Below are positions 3,751-15,071 of a stretch of DNA of 64,000 nt, piece after piece; within the stretch, counting starts at the first letter, position 1; each line of letters opens with the position of its first letter. A program made the position numbers and the translations under genes. The stretch lies in the IMG/VR virus record IMGVR_UViG_3300046507_000773, positions 1 through 64,000 of that record, one strand, 5' to 3'. Below the pieces are notes generated by a model, which saw only the letters and a program-made list of their open reading frames with translations, was not told the DNA's origin and ran no database searches.

Positions 3751-6700
3751 ATGAACATCATCTACACTCCGGAAATGCAAGCCGCAATCACGCTGTTCCA
3801 TCGTCGCTATGCAAAAGCGATGATGCTGGTGCATGACGATTACAACGTCAAGATGCTCGAAGGCATCCGTGAACACTTCGCAACCGTCGTCGGCAACAGC
3901 GCGCAGGCGTTCAACGAGCACGCGCACAAGAACATCGCGCAGATCACCGAGGAACTGCGCAACGGCGCAGAACCGACTCGTCCGAATAACTTGCTGTTCC
4001 GCCTGCTGGATCAGTTCTACCTGATGCTGAAGGAAAATGCTGAACTGGAAGTGGCGGCCGTCTTGTCGCCGGAACCGGTCAACGGCGTCATGCTCAAGAT
4101 TGTCGACGAAGCGGTTCGTGCCCTGATGGGTACGTTCCAGGATCGTGAGCAGGTCAAGGTGCTGCTCGATACCATCATCGCAAGTCCACTCATGGCCAAG
4201 CGGATTTTCGAGAGGATCGCAGCCACGTATTGGGCCCGCACCGAAAGCAACCTGGCTGATGCCTTGAAGCAGCAGGTCTACGGGGGCGATCGCACCGGCA
4301 TGCGCGGTCAGTTCTCCACGGCAGTGGCGCACGATGCTCAGGCGCTGCACAGGAAGGCAGAAGCCCAAGACCACCTGAACACGGTGGCTGATGCCATCCA
4401 GGGTGAAGACGAACTGCACGCTGCAGCACGTCTGTTCGACGGCACTGTCCTGGTCCATGTGATCGGAATCGGTCATCCGGCAGCAATCGAGGACATCGGT
4501 CAGCGCGTGCAAATGGCTGCCCCGAATGCAACCCGCGTACATGCTTTGGTCTATCATGGCGTAACGATCGACCGCGTCCGTCAGTTCTATCGCACCACCA
4601 TGGACGATGGCGCCAGTACCTTCCTGAAAGATGAACTGGCCAAGGAATCCCCGAAGATCATGAACCTGATCGTGCATCCGTATCCGCTCGGCGACGGTGC
4701 GGCCGAACAGGAACACGACAATAACGTCGGCTATTCGAACATCATCCAGCAAGCGGTGTTCGAACTGGGCGGTACTGTCTACCACATCGGCATGAATCAG
4801 ATTGATGACCTGAGGAAACTGACGGAAGCCGTGGGTGCAGCGGCAGGTGGTGTAAAGTCGGCCCGTGAAGTAAAGCCGGAAACGAAAGCGAACATGGTCG
4901 AGATCCAGCAAACCATCGATAACTACGATGGCTCTGTTGTGTTGCATTTCGTGGGCGAATCCGATCCGACCATCATCAGCGAAAAAATGCTGAAGTTCCA
5001 TGAAGTGATGAAAGATCGCCCAGTCTACCTGATCGATTACCAGGGTACGGATGTGGTGCGCTCGCACCAGCACCTCATGAACCAGATGGACTACCTGACC
5101 GATGTGTTGCTTAAGCATCCGAATGTTGTTCATTACATTATCGCTCCAGCCGGTATTGTCGTGAAGGACACTGCGGCGCGCGGCGGTGTGGATTCGTTCG
5201 AGGGTGAACTGTCCGTGCGGGTGTATCTGCAAGCTGTTGCTGTTGGCTTGAACAACTTGTGCGTTCCGGTCACTGTGCTGGATGATCGACGCCTGAACGA
5301 GCCATCGATGTTCCTCGGCAACCTCGCATGGACCATCAAGGCACGCAAACGCAGCGTTAACTTGCATGTGAGCCAGGCCGAAGTCGGTAGCTACAGTGCC
5401 GAACCGAAGTTTGGTCCGGAAACGCCGATGTCGGTGCGACTGGCTTTCGACGGCGTGCTGGTGGCACACGCTGCCGGTGTGACCGATCCCGATGAGCTAC
5501 AGGTGTTGCAAAGCCGTTTGGAGAAGACCATCCCCAATGGCCGCGTGATGGTGGTGAGCTATCCGTGTTCCGATGTTCAGGATGACCAGCAGAGCTTCAT
5601 CAATCTGATGGAAAACCTGAGCCGCAGTATCATCGAGGGCCAGATGGACATGGTCAACATCGTGGTGCCTAACAAAGAGGTGACCATGGCGGACGTTTCT
5701 GCAATCGGTCACGCACAGGCGCTCAGCAAGATCATCAACACGGCCGGTGTTCCGGCAGTGATTGTGATCATCAACGACGATGTGAGCGACCGCAAGCTCG
5801 AGGCCGACGTGGCATTCGTCATCAAGCAGGGTAAGTTCGTCCTGCAACCTACCTCGCGTGAGAAGAGCTTCGGCGTTCTGTCGCTGATCGCGCAGGGTTC
5901 GGGTAAGCAAGGCGAACGTGTCATGCCGGACAAGTCGCAAGGCGAACCTGAAGTGGGTCGGCCGGGCTGGTATGATCGTCCGGCTCCTGCTTTGACTCCG
6001 GTTGACGAGCGGCTCAATCCTCGTACTCTCGGCGAAGTGGAGCGTCGTGAGCCCGACTTTTCGCAGGCCGTGGTTTCGTTCGATGGTGTCGTTGTTTTGC
6101 ATACCTACAGCAACGGCAAACTCCAACTGCTGAGTGAACGGGTGCATGTCATTCGTGACACGCTGCAGCAAGCGCGCCTGTACACGCTCCCCTACGACGG
6201 CTATGCCTCGTCTGAAATTCTGGACAGGGTGAACGAAAACTTCCACACGGGCGAGCCGATCTGGACAGAAGGGAAAGACGGCGTCAAGGTGGCACACGTC
6301 ATTCTTTTCAACGGCAAACTCGAGCCGGCCCGCATTAGCTCACCGACGACGATGGTAGAACTGGAGTTGCACCATCTGCTCCAGGGCGTCCACATGCATG
6401 ACCGTCGCGCCATGTTCTTCGATGACGAAGACTTCACTTCGCACGAGAAGCTCGTCGAAGCGTTGAACAAGGTCGTCGAATATGCCATGGAAAAGTCCGT
6501 GCAAGATCCTGCTGCAGCCGAACAAGCTGCCCAGGTCGCCGAAGCCATCGGCGATGCTCGGACCGAACAGGCGAATCCCGGCCTCCAGAAGTTCATGGAA
6601 AACTCCGCGAACCTTGAAGAGAACATCGCAGGCGTCATTAAGCAGTTCCTCGATTCGTTGCCGGAAGAAGAACGGTCCCAGTTGGTTGGCACCATGAATG

Positions 6701-6768
6701 ATGGCATATTGGTGTCGAGCGCACTCGATCGCCTGATTAACATGGGCGTGATCGAAAACCGTCAGTAA
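3751..6768 (+). CDS. Large hypothetical protein with four internal domain repeats
   Basis: 1005 aa, AAGGAG RBS. Repeated (F/Y)DGxVxxH...Y motif. Confidence 0.85.
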   Translation: MNIIYTPEMQAAITLFHRRYAKAMMLVHDDYNVKMLEGIREHFATVVGNSAQAFNEHAHKNIAQITEELRNGAEPTRPNNLLFRLLDQFYLMLKENAELEVAAVLSPEPVNGVMLKIVDEAVRALMGTFQDREQVKVLLDTIIASPLMAKRIFERIAATYWARTESNLADALKQQVYGGDRTGMRGQFSTAVAHDAQALHRKAEAQDHLNTVADAIQGEDELHAAARLFDGTVLVHVIGIGHPAAIEDIGQRVQMAAPNATRVHALVYHGVTIDRVRQFYRTTMDDGASTFLKDELAKESPKIMNLIVHPYPLGDGAAEQEHDNNVGYSNIIQQAVFELGGTVYHIGMNQIDDLRKLTEAVGAAAGGVKSAREVKPETKANMVEIQQTIDNYDGSVVLHFVGESDPTIISEKMLKFHEVMKDRPVYLIDYQGTDVVRSHQHLMNQMDYLTDVLLKHPNVVHYIIAPAGIVVKDTAARGGVDSFEGELSVRVYLQAVAVGLNNLCVPVTVLDDRRLNEPSMFLGNLAWTIKARKRSVNLHVSQAEVGSYSAEPKFGPETPMSVRLAFDGVLVAHAAGVTDPDELQVLQSRLEKTIPNGRVMVVSYPCSDVQDDQQSFINLMENLSRSIIEGQMDMVNIVVPNKEVTMADVSAIGHAQALSKIINTAGVPAVIVIINDDVSDRKLEADVAFVIKQGKFVLQPTSREKSFGVLSLIAQGSGKQGERVMPDKSQGEPEVGRPGWYDRPAPALTPVDERLNPRTLGEVERREPDFSQAVVSFDGVVVLHTYSNGKLQLLSERVHVIRDTLQQARLYTLPYDGYASSEILDRVNENFHTGEPIWTEGKDGVKVAHVILFNGKLEPARISSPTTMVELELHHLLQGVHMHDRRAMFFDDEDFTSHEKLVEALNKVVEYAMEKSVQDPAAAEQAAQVAEAIGDARTEQANPGLQKFMENSANLEENIAGVIKQFLDSLPEEERSQLVGTMNDGILVSSALDRLINMGVIENRQ

Positions 6769-8228: not shown

Positions 8229-8238
8229 GGCAGCATAA

Positions 8239-8270
8239 GGGGGAGGCTTCGCGGCCTCCTTCTTTTTTTT
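8239..8270 (+). terminator. Intrinsic terminator
   Basis: GGGGGAGGC/GCCTCCTTC stem followed by a T8 tract, preceded by GCATAA. Confidence 0.85.
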
Positions 8271-8334
8271 GCCCGATTACCTTTAATAGTGTTTTTTATA
8301 CAGGACACGAAGTTTATGTAACCAAATTTCAACC

Positions 8335-8344
8335 ACATATCACG
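8335..8344 (+). promoter_or_regulatory. Early-promoter-like motif ACATATCACG
   Basis: Exact 10-mer repeated in five intergenic gaps. It resembles the phiKZ TATTAC early promoter. Confidence 0.7.
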
Positions 8345-8389
8345 GTTACGAGAGCTCACCAGAGTTCCAACACTAGGAAAGGAAACATC

Positions 8390-9379
8390 ATGCAATGGCA
8401 ATATTGGGCAGCAATTGGTTTGACTGCAGTCCTTTACATCAGTCTTTATCGCTCCGGGTTCTTCAGGTTCTCTAAAGAGCCGCAATTCAATGACATCCTC
8501 TACCAGCGAGGCGATGTCGCCTACGTGTCGCCCACGGCAATCATGCGTGCGCCCTTGCCCAAGTTCGATCCCGAGCGCGTCAAGGAAGACAACGTCGATC
8601 GCCTGGTTCGTCTTCGCATGGTCGAAGTCGCTCAGTCGCTTCTCGATCCTGCGTCCAACATCAAGGACGAAGAAGACCGCAAGCAATTGCGGCGCTACGC
8701 TACGGTGCAGTCGGCAATCCTTGGCCTGTCGATTCCGAAGTCGTTCATTCTGATCGACAAGGAAACCAAGCATCTCTTCATGTCGGTGCTGTCGCGTCTG
8801 GAACTGGTGAGTGTCGAGCGCGTTCCCGTGGGCTCGGACAAAGTCGACGATACCCATGAGCTTGCCTGGATCAACGTGGACATGCATAACGCAATCCTCG
8901 AACGAGAGCGTAAAGCACTCCTGGCCCAGTACAGCAGCGTCGATCATCTGGTCCAGCAAGAGTTCTTGCGCCAAATGGGAAGGAACGAGTACGATTACTT
9001 CCACATGTTTGCTACTCGCTGCCGGCGGCGCTTTAGCCCGCAGCAAAAGCAAAAGGTCGACGACGCAGGCATCAAGTCCGTCATCACTGCCTACGCTGCT
9101 CGCACGGGACTGAAGATTCCGCGCAGCTACGTCTCGTACGATCCGATCTCGGTTCTCTTGATGAACTGGGATGATCTTCCGAAACCGGAAGCGCAGGTCT
9201 ACGACTTCCGTAAGGGAGCAAATGTTCCGCGCTGCGAATGCGGCAACATGATGGGCCTCATGTACACTGGCTTGGTTTGCGATGCCTGTGATACATCAGT
9301 AATGCCTCCTATGGAGGGTTTCAAACCAGTTCCAGCAATCTGGCAATCCTACCCAAAAGCAGAAGGAAAGAATGGCTAA
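8390..9379 (+). CDS. Membrane-anchored protein with C-terminal RNAP beta'-type zinc finger
   Basis: N-terminal TM helix. C-terminal CECG-x8-G-x2-CDAC-x3-V. Confidence 0.7.
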   Translation: MQWQYWAAIGLTAVLYISLYRSGFFRFSKEPQFNDILYQRGDVAYVSPTAIMRAPLPKFDPERVKEDNVDRLVRLRMVEVAQSLLDPASNIKDEEDRKQLRRYATVQSAILGLSIPKSFILIDKETKHLFMSVLSRLELVSVERVPVGSDKVDDTHELAWINVDMHNAILERERKALLAQYSSVDHLVQQEFLRQMGRNEYDYFHMFATRCRRRFSPQQKQKVDDAGIKSVITAYAARTGLKIPRSYVSYDPISVLLMNWDDLPKPEAQVYDFRKGANVPRCECGNMMGLMYTGLVCDACDTSVMPPMEGFKPVPAIWQSYPKAEGKNG

Positions 9380-10028
9380 GCTTAAAGAGGGCGTCTTCAT
9401 TTCGTTTGAAGGCGCTGATGCTTCCGGTAAGACAACCAATACGTTCTTCTTCATTGAAGAACTAAGGCGTCGCGGGTATGAGGTAGTGCACACCCGCGAA
9501 CCGGGTGGTAGTCCAGTCGGTGAACAAATTCGTGCGTTGCTTCTTACCACGAAGATGGACAAAGATTCGGAAGCACTTCTTTTTGCTGCAAGCCGTCGTT
9601 GTAACATCATGCAAACGATCCTGCCCAATGTAGAAGAGGGCAGGGTTGTTGTGTGCGAGCGCTTTGCTGATTCGTCTTTCGCGTATCAGGGAGTCGCTCG
9701 TGATAATCGGGAACGTATCCTCGCACTGGAGCAATGGACAGTCGAGAACTACAAACCGAAGTACACGATCTTCTTGGATATCACTGAAGAAGAAAGTGAA
9801 CGGCGCTTGGCACTTCGCCGTAATACCACAGAGCTTGACATCTTCGAACTGGAAGCACAGAAGTTTCGTCAAGCTGTGTACAAGGGCTATCAGGAGCGGG
9901 TAGCCCAATTCCCAGAGCGTATCGTAAAGATTGACGCAATGGGTGCTTTAGACGTGGTCCAGGCTAACTTGGTCACCTGGATCGATACCGTGTTTGTACC
10001 AAACCATCCTCTCGCAGAAGAAAAATGA
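9372..10028 (+). CDS. tmk: Thymidylate kinase
   Basis: FISFEGADASGKTT P-loop, TREPGG, LLFAASR, ERFADSSFAYQG. Confidence 0.95.
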   Translation: MAKLKEGVFISFEGADASGKTTNTFFFIEELRRRGYEVVHTREPGGSPVGEQIRALLLTTKMDKDSEALLFAASRRCNIMQTILPNVEEGRVVVCERFADSSFAYQGVARDNRERILALEQWTVENYKPKYTIFLDITEEESERRLALRRNTTELDIFELEAQKFRQAVYKGYQERVAQFPERIVKIDAMGALDVVQANLVTWIDTVFVPNHPLAEEK

Positions 10029-10441
10029 AATCGTCCTTTAAGACCGGCCGTCAGCGCCGTACCAACCAACAGAAACTGAAACGCAGCAAAGCAGCGCTGG
10101 CGAGTCGCAAAGCAAACCGTGAGATGGAGCAGAAGAACACCATCCACATCAAGGGTAGCGTGACGAAGGGTGTCACTCGTTACCGCACCCAGTCCCGCTG
10201 GTCGGCTTTCAAAGCGTGGGCTGGCGAAAAGCTGTCCAAGTTCCGTGGCCTCTTCAAGACGAAGAAACAAAAGGAACAGGACCGTCTGTGGGAAATGCAC
10301 ATGGGTCAAGGACTGGGCCTGAATCGTTTCCTCAAGGAAGAAAACAAACCGGCATCGCCCGGTGGTGGTAGTGACGGTCGTTACTATCGTGAAGCCATCG
10401 ATCCGCCGCCGGTACCACACATCGAAGGCATCTACGGATGA
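10025..10441 (+). CDS. Basic hypothetical protein
   Basis: 138 aa, K/R-rich, ATGA-coupled. Confidence 0.75.
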   Translation: MKSSFKTGRQRRTNQQKLKRSKAALASRKANREMEQKNTIHIKGSVTKGVTRYRTQSRWSAFKAWAGEKLSKFRGLFKTKKQKEQDRLWEMHMGQGLGLNRFLKEENKPASPGGGSDGRYYREAIDPPPVPHIEGIYG

Positions 10442-10695
10442 CGACCGATTACACTGGCGGGCGCACCCAAGCGTGGGCCTGTCCTGGTAGCTGTGCAATG
10501 GAACTCGTAGCGGGGGTGTGCTGCGCATCCTCCTGCGAGTATTACGACAACTTCGTGAAGCAACAAAGGGAGGCTTCAAATGGCATCGAAGGCACAACTG
10601 GAACGGGAACACCTGGAAGAGATGAAACGCATGGCAAAGGAGTGCGGGATCAAGTTCGTGACCCCCAAAGCTCCGCCGATGGCGCCTCGTCCTAA
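10438..10695 (+). CDS. Cys-rich small protein (3' part uncertain)
   Basis: ATGA-coupled, CPGSC...CCASSC. It overlaps the next ORF by 116 nt. Confidence 0.5.
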   Translation: MTTDYTGGRTQAWACPGSCAMELVAGVCCASSCEYYDNFVKQQREASNGIEGTTGTGTPGRDETHGKGVRDQVRDPQSSADGASS

Positions 10696-10765
10696 CTGGC
10701 TGCCCAAGCCCACGATGGTTATCGTGGATTACATCACGAAGCTGCTTCCTGAGCGTCGTGTATAG
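10580..10765 (+). CDS. Small hypothetical protein
   Basis: 61 aa, GGAGG RBS, coupled to the next gene. Confidence 0.7.
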   Translation: MASKAQLEREHLEEMKRMAKECGIKFVTPKAPPMAPRPNWLPKPTMVIVDYITKLLPERRV

Positions 10766-11117
10766 CGTTTATCAAGAAGAGCCGGGTGGCACCTTTGAAG
10801 CCGATGGCGTGCTCTACGATTTGAATGGCATTTTGCGAGACACCGCAAGACTCCCAGTCAATCACATTGCACTGTCGAAGGTAGCATGGGCTTTAAATAG
10901 CCGCCCGCTCGACCCACAACGTGTTGAGGATGCGGACTACAGTGTCCCCGTCCTCATTACCCTTTATGCTGGCCGAAATCCGAAGTATAAAGGCAAGCCG
11001 CTTGTAGTTGACGGAGAACATCGCTGTGTCAAAGCGATCCGTGACAAACGAGTTACGATCGGATACCGTTTGGTGTCCGAAGCAATCATGAAGCGCCACA
11101 TCGTTAAGAAAGCTTGA
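10758..11117 (+). CDS. ParB/sulfiredoxin-like N-terminal domain protein
   Basis: ADYSVPVLI and VVDGEHRCVKA motifs. Confidence 0.7.
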   Translation: MYSVYQEEPGGTFEADGVLYDLNGILRDTARLPVNHIALSKVAWALNSRPLDPQRVEDADYSVPVLITLYAGRNPKYKGKPLVVDGEHRCVKAIRDKRVTIGYRLVSEAIMKRHIVKKA

Positions 11118-11118
11118 A

Positions 11119-11451
11119 ATGGATGTCACCCGTTTGTTCGTAACAAAAGAAACAGGAAAAACTGGCCGTTACCGTTACCGCCGTGGTTGGTTCGGTAAAG
11201 TCATTTTGCAAATCGAAGTGGGCATCCATCGTCATCCAATCGGAATTGATTCGAAGACGCTTTACCCGGTCGAAACGAAGTGGCGCGATGCAAGGCAGGA
11301 AGAAGTTGGGCTCTTCCATCCGCACGCAAATGCAGGCATGCAGTATCAGGATTACACCACACACTTTTTCATGCGCCTGACAGCAGCGGGCGTTCATGCA
11401 GTTAGCGAAGGACGCGAAGAACGCGCCTTGGCCACCGAGAGGAAAGAATGA
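11119..11451 (+). CDS. Hypothetical phage protein
   Basis: 110 aa, GRYRYRRGWFGKVILQIE. Confidence 0.7.
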   Translation: MDVTRLFVTKETGKTGRYRYRRGWFGKVILQIEVGIHRHPIGIDSKTLYPVETKWRDARQEEVGLFHPHANAGMQYQDYTTHFFMRLTAAGVHAVSEGREERALATERKE

Positions 11452-12080
11452 AGTTTATCGCACAACACGTATTTGACGCCGGCATGCGTGCCGACGTACT
11501 GTATTCCGAAGTCCGGCACATGAATGATCCGGCTGGTCGTTTGACCATCCAGTCGTACGGTAGTCGTACCAGCAGTCAAGGCATGCGTGCCACGGCATTC
11601 GATCTGAACGGCCCGGCAGACTTCCTCGACATGAAGCGAGGCGAAGTCGTCTTTGCCATGCAAGAAGCGCTCACGCGCCTTCTGAACAAGAGCCTGGACC
11701 GTTTGTCGATCCACGGCCTGAAAACGATCCAGTTGGAAGACTTCGGCCAACACACCGTTACCGAAGACAAGGTCTACGCGATCTGGGATTCGATCGACTT
11801 CGAACTGCTGCGTACCCGTCTGGAGCAATACGCCGCCATCGAAAACAAGCCGCGTGCTTACCTGGAGAAGAAACCAAAACTCTTCATCTGGACGCCGATC
11901 CGTGATACGAACCACACCGTCGGCATCGTGCACAACACGAAAGAAGAAGCGTTTGCCGTCGCAAGCGAGCTCGTGAAGAACTACCGCGGCGAGGGCAATC
12001 CGTTCGTCGGTTGGGGAACTGACGACTACACCTTGACCACGAAAGACATGGGTCAAGCTTTCGTGATCCAGTACGAATAG
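11448..12080 (+). CDS. Hypothetical protein
   Basis: 210 aa, ATGA-coupled. Confidence 0.75.
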   Translation: MKFIAQHVFDAGMRADVLYSEVRHMNDPAGRLTIQSYGSRTSSQGMRATAFDLNGPADFLDMKRGEVVFAMQEALTRLLNKSLDRLSIHGLKTIQLEDFGQHTVTEDKVYAIWDSIDFELLRTRLEQYAAIENKPRAYLEKKPKLFIWTPIRDTNHTVGIVHNTKEEAFAVASELVKNYRGEGNPFVGWGTDDYTLTTKDMGQAFVIQYE

Positions 12081-12088
12081 GAAAAAAC

Positions 12089-12301
12089 ATGAAGCACTTT
12101 GTCTATTTCATCTCTGGTGTTCTTGTCGCCAGTTTCGTGCAACTCGGCATTCCGGCTGCTAAAGCCTGGGGCCTGCAGGAGCAACTCAAGAAAGACCGTG
12201 CCAAGTACCAGCTCTATCTGGACTGCCGCGACAAAGAAAAAACCAAGTACGCCACTTACGAGTGTCTGCGTCTGAACAACCTGGGCTTCGAACAGCTCTA
12301 A
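12089..12301 (+). CDS. Small protein with signal peptide/TM
   Basis: 70 aa, hydrophobic N-terminus, two Cys. Confidence 0.7.
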   Translation: MKHFVYFISGVLVASFVQLGIPAAKAWGLQEQLKKDRAKYQLYLDCRDKEKTKYATYECLRLNNLGFEQL

Positions 12302-12312
12302 GGAAAAAGAAC

Positions 12313-13359
12313 ATGAAACAGTACTACGACACCGTGAACTTCATTCGCGAAACCGGTGACCAGCTGGAAAACCGTACCGGTATCGATGCGATCACGGTAC
12401 CGGGCGTTGCAATGTATTTCCGCATGAAGGACGGCTTCCCGATGCTGGGTGGTCGCTTTACGCCCTTCAAGTCCATGATCGGTGAACTGTGTGCATTCTA
12501 TCGCGCTTGCACCAGCGCTGCTCAATTCCGTGAGCTGGGCAGCAAGGTCTGGGATAAGAACGCCAATGATCTTGGCGTCGACAATTCGAACGCCTGGCTG
12601 CGTAACCCGTTCCGTGAAGGCGAAGACCACCTGGGCCCGATCTACGGTGACATGTGGCGCGCATGGCCCGGCTACAAAGTTATCGGCCGTCCTTCGATCG
12701 ATGAACCCGATGAAGCACATATGCGCTATGACGAGATCATAGCGCAGATCGAAAAGGACGGCTGGGAGCACATCGGTTACGCCGAGGTCGGCTCACCCGG
12801 TACACCGAAAGGTCTTCTGTATTACAAAAAGATCGATCAACTGGGTGACGCGATCCGTACCGTCATCAAGAACCCGAACAGCCGCCGCATCCTGTTCCAT
12901 GCCTGGAATCCGGCCGTGCTGGACGAAGTCTCGCTGCCTGCCTGTCACCTGCTGTATCAGCTGCTGCCGAATCCGAAAACGAAGGTGCTGAACCTGTGCG
13001 TGTACCTGCGCTCCAACGACATCGGCCTGGGTGCTCCGTACAACATCTCGCAAGCTGCGGCTCAGTTGCACTTCATCTCTCGTCTGACCGGCTATACGCC
13101 TGGCACTATTTCGTACTTCGCTGCTGATGCCCACGTCTACGTCAATCAGCTTGAATGGCTGGACGAACAGCTGGAACTGTGGAATGCGGGTCAGCGTTAC
13201 GAACTGCCGCGCATCGAAATCAGCGACCGGGTGCCGGACTGTAGTCATGATGCAGAAAAAGCAGTGGCCTGGCTTACTGAAGTAGAACCATCGGACTTCA
13301 TCCTGCACGACTACCAGTACCACACCCTGAAAACCCCAACCCCTCCCATGGCGGTGTGA
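12313..13359 (+). CDS. thyA: Thymidylate synthase (ThyA type)
   Basis: NPNSRRILFHAWNP, LPACH catalytic Cys, YLRSNDIGLGAPYN, DAHVYVNQ. Start reassigned to ATG 12313 after AAGGA. Confidence 0.95.
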   Translation: MKQYYDTVNFIRETGDQLENRTGIDAITVPGVAMYFRMKDGFPMLGGRFTPFKSMIGELCAFYRACTSAAQFRELGSKVWDKNANDLGVDNSNAWLRNPFREGEDHLGPIYGDMWRAWPGYKVIGRPSIDEPDEAHMRYDEIIAQIEKDGWEHIGYAEVGSPGTPKGLLYYKKIDQLGDAIRTVIKNPNSRRILFHAWNPAVLDEVSLPACHLLYQLLPNPKTKVLNLCVYLRSNDIGLGAPYNISQAAAQLHFISRLTGYTPGTISYFAADAHVYVNQLEWLDEQLELWNAGQRYELPRIEISDRVPDCSHDAEKAVAWLTEVEPSDFILHDYQYHTLKTPTPPMAV

Positions 13360-13360
13360 C

Positions 13361-13603
13361 ATGATTGGACACGATCGTACGATTAACCCTATCATCGCCG
13401 GCGTGGAGCGTTTCTGGGGAGAAATCAGGCAAGCGACTCTCGAAGCGGTGCAAGAGGGCATCTTGAATGACAAGCGTGATCGTGCACACATGTCGACCAA
13501 ACGGCACAAGTGCGAAGTCATTCCCCGAAAGCGCAAAAGCAAAGTTAAAGCATCTCCTTTGCTTGTAAAGCTTGTGACCGCCAATACCAAAAAGGAGCAC
13601 TAG
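13361..13603 (+). CDS. Small basic hypothetical protein
   Basis: 80 aa, in operon order. Confidence 0.65.
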   Translation: MIGHDRTINPIIAGVERFWGEIRQATLEAVQEGILNDKRDRAHMSTKRHKCEVIPRKRKSKVKASPLLVKLVTANTKKEH

Positions 13604-13604
13604 C

Positions 13605-13910
13605 ATGGGTATCGTCACGTTTGGTATGCAAAGGTTTAGCGATCCTTTTCCACGTCGTTCCGAACGCATTGACTTTGAGGCGCAAGCAGAAGCCGTGGAA
13701 GAAGTGCAGGAAACGGAAAAGCGTCGGGCGGCCCAAGTATCGAAGAAAGGACACAAGAAAAAGGTCTTTCACAAGAGCGACAAGCCCGACGTGAAGACCT
13801 CTTCTTTGCTCACCCGCATGATGGAACCGGTGGTTGATCCGCACAAGAAAGAGCGTGACGCGGAGTTCCGCAAGAACCCTTTCCGAGGGCTCGATAGGGG
13901 ACGCTGGTAA
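13605..13910 (+). CDS. Small charged hypothetical protein
   Basis: 101 aa, AAGGAG RBS. Confidence 0.7.
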   Translation: MGIVTFGMQRFSDPFPRRSERIDFEAQAEAVEEVQETEKRRAAQVSKKGHKKKVFHKSDKPDVKTSSLLTRMMEPVVDPHKKERDAEFRKNPFRGLDRGRW

Positions 13911-13973
13911 GGAAATAATTGCACTCTCATCCTACGTAGCGGTAAGAACTTTTAACCAAACGAAGGATGAGAG

Positions 13974-15071
13974 ATGCAGTTGAATTTCGATGACGAGGAC
14001 ACCCTCGTCACCAACCAAGCAGCACCGGAAGGTGCTTCCGCAGCAGACGTCGCTAAGCGTGTGAACGTCAGCGAGAAGCGCATCATCAACGGTAAAACGG
14101 ACGTGAACCAGCTGGTTCCGTTCAAGCACAAGTGGGCCTGGGACAAGTATCTGGCAGGTTGCGCAAACCACTGGATGCCGCAAGAAGTGAACATGCAGCG
14201 CGATATCGAACTGTGGAAAGATCCGAAAGGTCTGTCCGATGACGAACGTCGCCTGGTCAAGCGCAACCTCGGCTTCTTCGTGACCGCCGACTCGCTGGCA
14301 GCCAACAACATCGTGCTGGGCACCTATCGCCACATCACGTCGCCGGAATGCCGCCAGTACCTGCTGCGTCAAGCTTTCGAAGAAGCGATCCACACCCACG
14401 CCTACCAGTACATCGTCGAGTCGCTCGGCCTGGACGAGAAGGAAGTCTTCAACGCGTACAACGAGATCCCGTCGATCCGTAATAAGGACCAGTTCCTGAT
14501 TCCGTTCATCGACGTTTTGACCAACCCGGAATTCAAAACCGGCACGATCGAAGCGGATCAGACGCTCCTGAAGTCCCTGATCGTTTTCGCCTGCATGATG
14601 GAAGGCCTGTTCTTCTACGTGGGCTTCACGCAGATCCTGGCACTGGGTCGTCAAAACAAGATGGTCGGCGCCGCCGAGCAGTATCAATACATCTTGCGCG
14701 ACGAATCGATGCACTGCAACTTCGGCATCGACCTGATCAACTCGATCAAGGCAGAAGACGATCGCCTGTTCACGCCGGCATTCCAGGAAGAGATCAAAGC
14801 CCTGTTCCATCAGGCTGTTGAACTCGAATGCGCTTACGCTGACGACACCATGCCGCGTGGCGTGCTGGGTCTGAATGCAGGCATGTTCAAAGCGTACCTG
14901 CGCTTCATCGCCAACCGTCGTGCTGTGCAGATCGGCTTGCCGCCGCTCTTCGCACAGGAAGAAAACCCGTTCCCGTGGATGGCCGAGATGATCGACCTGA
15001 AGAAGGAGCGTAACTTCTTCGAAACCCGTGTTACCGAATATCAAACCGGTGGCGCACTGAACTGGGATTAA
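13974..15071 (+). CDS. nrdB: Ribonucleotide reductase class Ia beta subunit
   Basis: [23 protein letters not shown] (radical Tyr retained), [23 protein letters not shown]. Confidence 0.97.

What the first reader, a model, noticed from the sequence alone, without database searches (positions are those of the whole stretch)
9233..9301. RNAP beta'-type zinc finger on a membrane-anchored early protein
Seen: CECGNMMGLMYTGLVCDACDTSV at the end of a protein with an N-terminal TM helix. Known: the bacterial beta' zinc-binding domain is CxCG-x8-G-x2-CxxC-x3-V (E. coli C70-C88), with the same spacing and Gly positions. The basic DNA-contacting residues are missing here. Inference: a captured polymerase domain used as a membrane-tethered decoy or protein-interaction module.
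Basis: partly seen in the sequence, partly recalled or inferred. Interest (0 to 1): 0.6.

Follow-up and report, generated by a model that had tools for sequence, protein, structure and literature searches.

The report
Polymerase zinc finger copied onto membrane protein
A nucleus-forming jumbo phage from rhizosphere metagenomes has fused a copy of the small zinc-binding finger of its own RNA polymerase onto the tail of a membrane-anchored early protein of unknown function; the copy is real and kept by selection, but what it binds is not known.

Summary
Bases 9233-9301 encode residues 282-304 of a 329-aa ORF (8390-9379, +), with four Cys spaced CxCG-x8-G-x2-CxxC.

The finger matches the zinc-binding domain (ZBD) of the beta'-N subunit of jumbo-phage non-virion RNA polymerases (nvRNAP):
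- BLASTP to the phage's own subunit, E 2e-8.
- A profile of 118 foreign ZBDs scores it 33 bits, against 6.7 bits for the next ORF in the genome.
- hhalign gives 97.6% probability, E 4e-12.
- Shuffles that keep the Cys fixed never reach the observed score.

No Pfam zinc ribbon matches. Its model superposes almost only on bacterial beta' ZBDs, though no single match is significant.

Residues 1-265 belong to an unnamed jumbo-phage family. It has a conserved N-terminal hydrophobic helix and sits next to thymidylate kinase. Only 3 of its 24 members carry the finger, so the finger is a derived fusion.

The gene follows a terminator. Its promoter-like motif is shared with the nuclear-shell and sigma-like genes, which suggests early expression.

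Function is untested. The one complex prediction gave no verdict. The missing basic residues are a trait of all phage nvRNAP fingers, not a loss here.

The parts
8237..8274 (+). Intrinsic-terminator-like hairpin (12-bp stem, 4-nt loop) plus a T-run. It ends the upstream unit, so the gene starts a new transcription unit.
8322..8344 (+). Promoter-like motif with core ACATATCACG preceded by an A/T-rich TTTCAA stretch. It lies about 50 nt upstream of the ATG and recurs about nine times on the + strand of the genome, including upstream of the chimallin and gp68-like genes. Putative early (virion RNAP) promoter.
   Evidence: the rule that such a motif marks early promoters comes from PMC7598289. No transcript data.
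8375..8385 (+). Purine-rich Shine-Dalgarno-like stretch ahead of the ATG at 8390.
   Evidence: read directly from the sequence
8390..9379 (+). CDS of 329 aa (P0001), made of an N-terminal anchor, an alpha-helical core, a linker, a ZBD and a tail.
8393..8452 (+). Residues 2-21: hydrophobic helix, a putative N-out/C-in membrane anchor.
8492..9175 (+). Residues 35-262: conserved, mostly helical core of an unnamed jumbo-phage family (FLC9 gp295-like). AF2 pLDDT is about 90. Residues 165-248 look weakly winged-helix-like.
9176..9217 (+). Residues 263-276: low-confidence linker. This is where finger-less homologues end.
9218..9319 (+). Residues 277-310: nvRNAP beta'-N-type zinc-binding domain. The reported motif at 9233-9301 lies inside it.
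9320..9376 (+). Residues 311-329: tail that keeps the P-x3-W-x3-P spacing of the beta' segment following the ZBD. It is conserved in P0002 but not in P0004, and is modelled at low confidence.
9372..10028 (+). Thymidylate kinase gene. Its start overlaps the stop of the finger gene by 8 nt, and it is a conserved neighbour of the whole family.

Best explanation
Shown:
- The window is the first 64 kb of a 227-kb nucleus-forming, chimallivirus-like jumbo phage.
- ORF 8390-9379 belongs to an unnamed jumbo-phage family of about 260 aa. Members have an N-terminal hydrophobic helix and a helical cytoplasmic core, and lie directly or one gene upstream of thymidylate kinase.
- In one small sub-lineage (three known sequences), a roughly 35-47-residue copy of the zinc-binding domain of the nvRNAP beta'-N subunit has been fused to the C-terminus through a flexible linker, and purifying selection has kept it.

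Inferred:
- The gene is early, transcribed by the virion RNAP.
- The anchor places the core and finger on the cytoplasmic face of the inner membrane.
- The four Cys bind one Zn.
- The finger works as a small Zn-stabilised protein-binding knob, not a nucleic-acid binder, because it has no basic surface.

Most likely mechanism, about 0.2-0.25 on its own: the finger shows the same surface as the polymerase's ZBD. It would then hold at the membrane something that normally docks beside that ZBD, such as the sigma-like gp68 homologue or another factor at the RNA exit.
For: Phage identity:
- Chimallin, phrog_4795, E 8e-74, lies directly upstream of the nvRNAP beta'-N gene.
- That beta'-N subunit (P0003) matches phrog_2987 at 4e-150, Pfam Rpb1_2, carries NADFDGD, and matches PDB 7ogp_A.
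- A gp68 homologue matches 7ogp_B at 8e-44.

Finger homology:
- Search of the phage's own genome, E 1e-5.
- BLASTP 41.6 bits, E 2e-8, 31% identity over 48 aa.
- A profile of 118 foreign ZBDs scores P0001, P0002 and P0004 at 33.3, 28.6 and 22.7 bits. The next ORF scores 6.7.
- hhalign 97.6%, E 4.2e-12, 45 columns.
- Cys-fixed shuffles never reach the observed score.
- phrog_2987 is the only PHROG hit for the isolated C-terminal segment.

Fold: with the A3 alignment the knuckles reach pLDDT 82-88. Of the top 50 Foldseek PDB rows, 48 are bacterial beta' chains, aligned over 26-34 residues at rmsd mostly 1.1-2.4 A.

Derived fusion:
- 21 of 24 family representatives end near residue 265.
- The five closest form a 100/100 clade in which the two finger-less ones pair at 83/91.

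Other support:
- Zn binding by the parent domain is shown by cryo-EM for phiKZ gp55 (PMC7618050).
- Anchor.
- Selection.
- Early motif.
- Synteny with thymidylate kinase.
Against: - Nothing bears on function. The complex prediction with the gp68 homologue gave no verdict.
- The finger is poorly modelled without beta' sequences in the alignment: pLDDT about 50.
- The Foldseek E-values (0.5-2) are not significant for so small a domain, and VIA-align found nothing. The A3 model also leaned on phage beta' rows.
- Against PDB sequences, PKC C1 domains and a mercuric-reductase HMA domain score as well as or slightly better than beta' chains, all non-significantly.
- This protein's own anchor is only marginally hydrophobic.
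- Early timing rests on a motif, not on transcripts.
- Only three finger-bearing sequences are known, all from metagenomes.
- nvRNAP acts inside the phage nucleus, so a membrane-bound mimic would meet its partners only before import.
Confidence: 0.6

Rival explanations
1. The captured finger has no link to transcription any more. It serves only as a Zn-stabilised cap, for folding, stability, self-association or binding to the protein's own core or to a neighbour such as thymidylate kinase.
For: - 21 of 24 family members do without it.
- The tail after the finger is not conserved in P0004.
- The finger lacks basic residues.
- Tight, deep synteny links the family to thymidylate kinase and not to polymerase genes.
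Against: Residues beyond the Zn ligands and structural glycines are still shared with the polymerase family, namely N-x-P before the first Cys and T-x-V-x2-P-x-E after the last. That fits a retained surface, but they could be purely structural.
Confidence: 0.3
2. The motif is a generic four-Cys zinc ribbon, or a C1-like or HMA-like metal site, that resembles the beta' ZBD by convergence only.
For: In the PDB sequence search the best rows are a mercuric-reductase HMA domain (E 0.058) and PKC C1 domains (E 0.11-0.5), ahead of beta' chains (E 0.6-1.6). Cys-rich short motifs often give such hits.
Against: - All of those hits are non-significant.
- Pfam, including its zinc-ribbon, C1 and HMA models, gives nothing at E up to 10.
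- The match to phage nvRNAP ZBDs is far stronger and covers 45 columns.
- Shuffles that keep the Cys never reach the observed score.
- A C1 domain needs six Cys and two His, and an HMA domain needs about 70 residues. Neither is present.
- The structure search returns beta' chains almost exclusively.
Confidence: 0.05
3. The protein is a polymerase accessory part. It would supply a ZBD in trans to the virion RNAP, whose beta'-N subunit lacks one, or act as an assembly factor for one of the two phage polymerases.
For: The vRNAP beta'-N homologue (G000 115088-116707, phrog_2986) has no Cys finger. PMC7824862 notes that only nvRNAPs carry the Zn ribbon.
Against: - Most phages with both polymerases have only the finger-less form of this family, or none.
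- The predicted topology puts the finger on the cytoplasmic face of the membrane.
- The gene is not near polymerase genes.
Confidence: 0.05

Closest known systems
Zinc-binding domain of the beta'-N subunit of jumbo-phage non-virion RNAP (phiKZ gp55; PDB 7OGP/8QUE)
   Same: Same CxCG-x8-G-x2-CxxC-x3-V spacing, the same flanking N-x-P and V-x2-P-x-E residues, and the same lack of basic residues. The profile and hhalign matches are significant. In phiKZ the domain binds Zn through four Cys (PMC7618050).
   Different: Here it is isolated at the C-terminus of an unrelated membrane-anchored protein. There is no clamp, no double-psi barrel and no NADFDGD. phiKZ gp55 itself scores only 12 bits. The nearest ZBDs come from metagenomic relatives of this phage.
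Bacterial RNAP beta' ZBD (E. coli C70, C72, C85, C88)
   Same: Identical Cys and Gly spacing (established knowledge). The model superposes on 26-34 residues of many bacterial beta' chains, mostly at rmsd 1.1-2.4 A.
   Different: The bacterial domain is basic and contacts nucleic acid. Sequence similarity to it is not significant, and Pfam RNA_pol_Rpb1_1 does not match.
Burkholderia phage FLC9 gp295 (BDD79814.1) and an uncharacterised 251-aa protein of Ralstonia phage RSL2 (A0A0A8J9J8)
   Same: FLC9 gp295 is a sequence homologue of the core: tblastn E 7e-5 from P0001 and 1e-15 from family member P0009. The RSL2 protein is linked only by a Foldseek fold match, probability 0.97, E 4e-3. Both phages are jumbo phages.
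   Different: FLC9 gp295 (257 aa) and the RSL2 protein (251 aa) are too short to carry the C-terminal finger. Neither is characterised.
Membrane-anchored anti-sigma factors (for example RseA, or the zinc-binding ZAS class)
   Same: Only the proposed logic is shared: a single-pass membrane protein whose cytoplasmic part could hold a transcription component at the membrane.
   Different: No sequence or fold relation was found. The ZAS H-x3-C-x2-C motif is absent and Pfam gives no hit. Binding to the sigma-like subunit is untested.

Membership tests
msRNAP beta' N-terminal zinc-binding domain (jumbo-phage nvRNAP type) | Four Cys spaced CxC-x12-CxxC, with conserved Gly after Cys2, a mid-loop Gly, and Gly three residues before Cys3 | tested here: met
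   C282, C284, C297, C300 and G285, G289, G294 align column for column with 22 phage ZBDs.
msRNAP beta' N-terminal zinc-binding domain (jumbo-phage nvRNAP type) | Significant sequence or profile similarity beyond the metal ligands | tested here: met
   BLASTP E 2e-8. HMM of foreign ZBDs 33.3 bits against 6.7 for the next ORF. hhalign 97.6%, E 4e-12. Cys-fixed shuffles 0 of 2,000.
msRNAP beta' N-terminal zinc-binding domain (jumbo-phage nvRNAP type) | Fold superposes on solved beta' ZBDs | tested here: inconclusive
   48 of the top 50 Foldseek rows are beta' chains, rmsd mostly 1.1-2.4 A, but E is 0.5-2 and the model's alignment held phage beta' rows. VIA-align gave no match. Without those rows pLDDT is about 50.
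msRNAP beta' N-terminal zinc-binding domain (jumbo-phage nvRNAP type) | Binds one Zn ion | not testable with these tools
   Shown only for the parent domain in phiKZ gp55 (PMC7618050).
RNAP beta' subunit (as a polymerase subunit) | Clamp and double-psi barrel with NADFDGD following the ZBD | tested here: not met
   The protein ends 25 residues after the motif. It has no Pfam Rpb1 domains and no DxDGD. Residues 1-265 belong to another family.
Generic zinc ribbons, PKC C1 and HMA domains | Match to the family profile; C1 needs six Cys and two His; HMA needs a roughly 70-aa ferredoxin-like fold | tested here: not met
   No Pfam family at E up to 10. PDB hits have E 0.058-0.5 over 23-37 residues only. 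The finger has four Cys and no His.
Unnamed jumbo-phage family (FLC9 gp295-like membrane-anchored helical protein) | N-terminal hydrophobic helix, conserved core (R102, T105, I115-P116, D123, F207, S230, T233-A234, P244, Y247), position upstream of thymidylate kinase | tested here: met
   23 representatives at E up to 8e-4. Alignment A1. Hydropathy. Synteny in six of six contexts read.
Zinc-binding anti-sigma (ZAS) factors | Anti-sigma domain with H-x3-C-x2-C and demonstrated sigma binding | tested here: not met
   No Pfam hit and the motif is absent. Binding to the sigma-like subunit got no verdict.

The most novel reading that the evidence does not exclude
The finger is a membrane-tethered mimic of the polymerase's own ZBD. 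Early in infection it would capture the sigma-like gp68 homologue or another factor that docks at the nvRNAP RNA-exit and ZBD face. This would delay or place nvRNAP assembly or nuclear import: in effect an anti-sigma-like regulator built by copying a piece of the polymerase.
Probability: 0.12. Interest if true: 0.8.

Novelty: new variant of a known kind. Interest (0 to 1): 0.45.

Why it matters
The beta' zinc-binding domain is described as a universal, integral part of multisubunit RNA polymerases (Lane and Darst, cited in PMC7618050). I found no report of it as a free module on another protein. This rests on two literature searches and the papers read, not an exhaustive survey.

Here it has been copied out of a phage polymerase and kept under selection on a membrane-anchored early protein of a nucleus-forming phage. 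If the copy still binds what the polymerase's finger binds, it would be a natural probe for partners of that poorly understood face of the phage nvRNAP. It could also be a regulator of when or where the polymerase is assembled before import into the phage nucleus.

If it does not, it is a tidy example of domain shuffling inside a jumbo phage genome. It also serves as a marker for an uncharacterised, syntenic gene family next to thymidylate kinase.

Tried and rejected
- DNA search of the phage collection: no match.
- Pfam on the whole protein and on the finger alone: nothing at E up to 10.
- PHROGs on all 24 family members: nothing.
- Word-index protein search, whole protein: only the protein itself and one 84% relative.
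- Word-index protein search, finger region alone: the same two, so uninformative.
With A2 it found nothing in viral contigs or metagenome contigs.
- Fold searches of the full model: no PDB match by Foldseek. VIA-align gives only weak winged-helix-like matches, Z 5-6, for residues 165-248, which is a common arrangement and is not used as evidence.
- ESM Atlas shape search: the top two rows are RNAP beta' N-terminal fragments, but TM is 0.20-0.28, too low to use.
- Atlas feature search of the core: no usable hit.
- VIA-align on the finger model: nothing.
- Complex prediction, gp68 homologue with residues 268-329: no verdict, score 0.00, controls not run. This is neither for nor against binding.
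- A second BLASTP segment between P0001 194-276 and beta'-N 136-201 (E 0.49, not colinear) is treated as chance.
- JADA (phiKZ gp124), the early vesicle-associated protein sensed by Avs5, was checked as a possible identity. It is rejected because it is a 721-aa protein with no anchor described, encoded next to an nvRNAP gene.
- The nvRNAP import study (Imp1, Imp7) gives no role to the ZBD.
- The small genes lying between family members and thymidylate kinase in two distant phages have no finger.
- Pfam RNA_pol_Rpb1_1 does not detect even the phage's own beta'-N. Its silence on the finger therefore says little.
- Sequencing runs: rhizosphere metagenomes only, no RNA run.

Full report
1. What is there

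The ORF at 8390-9379 (+) encodes 329 aa (P0001). Four of the protein's five Cys lie there, at 282, 284, 297 and 300.

Upstream features:
- A strong terminator-like hairpin with a T-run at 8237-8274 precedes the gene.
- An A/T-rich spacer follows it.
- A purine-rich ribosome-binding stretch lies just before the ATG.

The stop codon overlaps the start of a thymidylate kinase gene by 8 nt.

2. The genome

The window is the first 64 kb of a 226,810-bp virus record, estimated 86% complete. It is held by rhizosphere metagenome runs. The record encodes:
- a nuclear shell protein (chimallin, phrog_4795, E 8e-74), directly upstream of the next item;
- a 514-aa beta'-N-like subunit (P0003), with NADFDGD, Pfam Rpb1_2, phrog_2987 at 4e-150, and a match to phiKZ gp55 in PDB 7OGP;
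- a homologue of the sigma-like subunit gp68 (7ogp_B, E 8e-44);
- a virion-RNAP beta'-N homologue (phrog_2986) that has no Cys finger.

This is a nucleus-forming, phiKZ-like (chimallivirus-like) jumbo phage. No isolate matches it at the DNA level.

3. Is the finger beta'-type?

Evidence that it is:
- Searching the phage's own genome with P0001 finds one second place, the ZBD of P0003 (E 1e-5).
- BLASTP aligns residues 277-324 with P0003 75-121 at 31% identity, 41.6 bits, E 2e-8.
- I collected 119 ZBD segments (P0003's own plus 118 from its homologues) and built a profile from the 118 foreign ones. Against all 1,621 ORFs of the genome plus four family members it scored P0003 at 93 bits, P0001 at 33.3 (E 3e-9), P0002 at 28.6 and P0004 at 22.7. 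Nothing else exceeded 6.7 bits.
- hhalign of the three fingers against 21 foreign ZBD segments gives 97.6% probability, E 4.2e-12, over 45 columns.
- With the Cys held in place, 2,000 shuffles of the finger reached at most 61, against an observed 88.
- Shared positions go beyond the ligands: N-x-P before Cys1, G after Cys2, two loop Gly, and T-x-V-x2-P-x-E after Cys4. In P0001 and P0002 the P-x3-W-x3-P of the next beta' segment is also shared.

- Pfam gives no hit of any kind at E up to 10.
- In the PDB sequence search all rows are non-significant. An HMA domain (E 0.058) and PKC C1 domains (E 0.11-0.5) sit slightly above eleven bacterial beta' entries (six distinct sequences) and phiKZ gp55 (E 0.6-1.7). 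The beta' and gp55 hits all fall on the ZBD.
- The finger has neither the six Cys and two His of a C1 domain nor the length of an HMA domain.

So the generic reading is not supported, but single-sequence searches alone would not have settled it.

Structure:
- The full-length model leaves the finger at pLDDT about 50.
- With phage ZBD rows in the alignment, the knuckles reach 82-88.
- Of the top 50 Foldseek rows, 48 are bacterial beta' chains, aligned over 26-34 residues at rmsd mostly 1.1-2.4 A. E-values are 0.5-2 because the domain is tiny.
- VIA-align reports nothing.

I count this as consistent, not independent.

4. Where the finger came from

The best pairwise partners are ZBDs of other metagenomic jumbo phages (scores up to 111), not the phage's own (88). 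phiKZ gp55 and bacterial beta' score only about 12-13 bits.

The source is therefore the nvRNAP beta'-N lineage of this group of phages. It is not a recent copy of the resident gene, and it is not host RpoC.

The phage ZBD family is acidic to neutral in the loop.

5. The carrier protein

An exhaustive search found 23 representatives, most 246-303 aa, matching residues 1-265. Only P0001, P0002 (84% identical) and P0004 (49%, on a 919-bp contig cut at its 5' end) continue into a finger.

On a tree of the core, the five closest members form a 100/100 clade. The two finger-less ones pair at 83/91. That means one gain, or one gain and one loss, and in either case a derived fusion.

Family features:
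- An N-terminal hydrophobic segment, with Kyte-Doolittle mean 1.6 or more in 17 of 24 members. It is followed by net positive charge in most members, which suggests an N-out/C-in anchor. P0001's own value, 1.34, is marginal.
- A confidently modelled helical core, pLDDT about 90.
- No PDB fold match and no Pfam or PHROG family.

Isolated-phage relatives are FLC9 gp295 by sequence and, by fold only, an RSL2 protein.

In all six contexts read, the gene lies directly upstream of thymidylate kinase, or one small gene upstream. This includes members only 19-24% identical and a 237-kb contig.

Between P0001 and P0002, synonymous sites are saturated while dN is 0.06 in the core and 0.15 in residues 266-329.

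6. Timing

A motif with core ACATATCACG behind an A/T-rich TTTCAA stretch lies about 50 nt upstream of the ATG. It recurs about nine times on the + strand, including just upstream of the chimallin gene and the gp68-like gene.

A review states that each RNAP-encoding jumbo phage has one such bioinformatically detectable motif. Wherever it has been tested, it is the early promoter used by the virion RNAP (PMC7598289). nvRNAP subunits are early products in phiKZ (PMC8287921). Early expression is therefore likely but not shown, because no RNA run holds this phage.

7. How it may work

Shown: a selectively maintained nvRNAP-type ZBD on a flexible tail of a family whose anchor and core are conserved.

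Inferred: Zn binding, because the parent domain in phiKZ binds Zn through four Cys (PMC7618050); a cytoplasmic location for the finger; and a protein-binding role.

In phiKZ the ZBD lies beside the clamp, in a region tied to promoter recognition. The sigma-like gp68 contacts gp55. nvRNAP import into the nucleus depends on assembled subunits.

A tethered copy could therefore hold a ZBD partner at the membrane before import. I tested the likeliest pair, the gp68 homologue with residues 268-329. The result was no verdict, which is no evidence either way.

The plainer rival is that the finger is now only a structural or self-association cap. It is nearly as likely.

8. Verdict

A beta'-type origin is supported, and refined to the phage nvRNAP lineage. 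Capture as a derived fusion is supported. The anchor and early timing are supported indirectly. The decoy function is open.

It is a new variant of a known kind: a polymerase domain in a new setting. Interest is moderate.

Noticed in passing
G000 8335, 18183, 24057, 26792, 34489, 49506, 124311, 161290, 169605 (+ strand; the first six lie in the window): A conserved promoter-like motif (A/T-rich, TTTCAA, then ACATATCACG, then N-A-N-TTG) sits upstream of about nine genes, including the chimallin gene and the gp68-like sigma-like subunit gene. It is probably this phage's early (virion RNAP) promoter consensus.
   Followed up: partly
Proteins P0027-P0032 and P0036 (nvRNAP beta'-N of the closest relatives, 64-74% identical to P0003): Their ZBD reads C-E-G-x-H where the family has C-E-C-G-x. 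The second Cys is lost and a His two residues after its position may take its place as a Zn ligand. In all, 13 of 119 ZBDs depart from the four-Cys pattern.
   Followed up: partly
G000 115088-116707 (+), outside the window: The virion-RNAP beta'-N homologue (539 aa, phrog_2986, ADFDGD) has no Cys finger. This agrees with the published remark that only nvRNAPs keep the Zn ribbon.
   Followed up: partly
G000 161339-164954 (+), outside the window: The chimallin gene lies directly upstream of the nvRNAP beta'-N gene, the same order as phiKZ gp54-gp55.
   Followed up: yes
L010:5797-6165 (metagenomic relative): In a distant phage, a 123-aa protein lies between the family gene and thymidylate kinase. 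By eye it carries a helix-turn-helix-like stretch of the sigma region 4 / LuxR type. It was not scanned.
   Followed up: no
window 3751-6768 (+): A 1,005-aa ORF has no Pfam or PHROG match. It is the largest unexplained gene near the finding.
   Followed up: no
window 9372-15071 (+): An early-looking nucleotide-metabolism cluster follows the finger gene: thymidylate kinase, thymidylate synthase (12262-13359) and the ribonucleotide reductase small subunit (13974-15071).
   Followed up: partly
P0001 residues 165-248 (window 8882-9133): This part of the core gives weak winged-helix-like structural matches (cullin WHB, Topo VI-A, Cdt1; Z 5-6). That is too weak to call, but it is the only hint about the core's fold.
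   Followed up: partly
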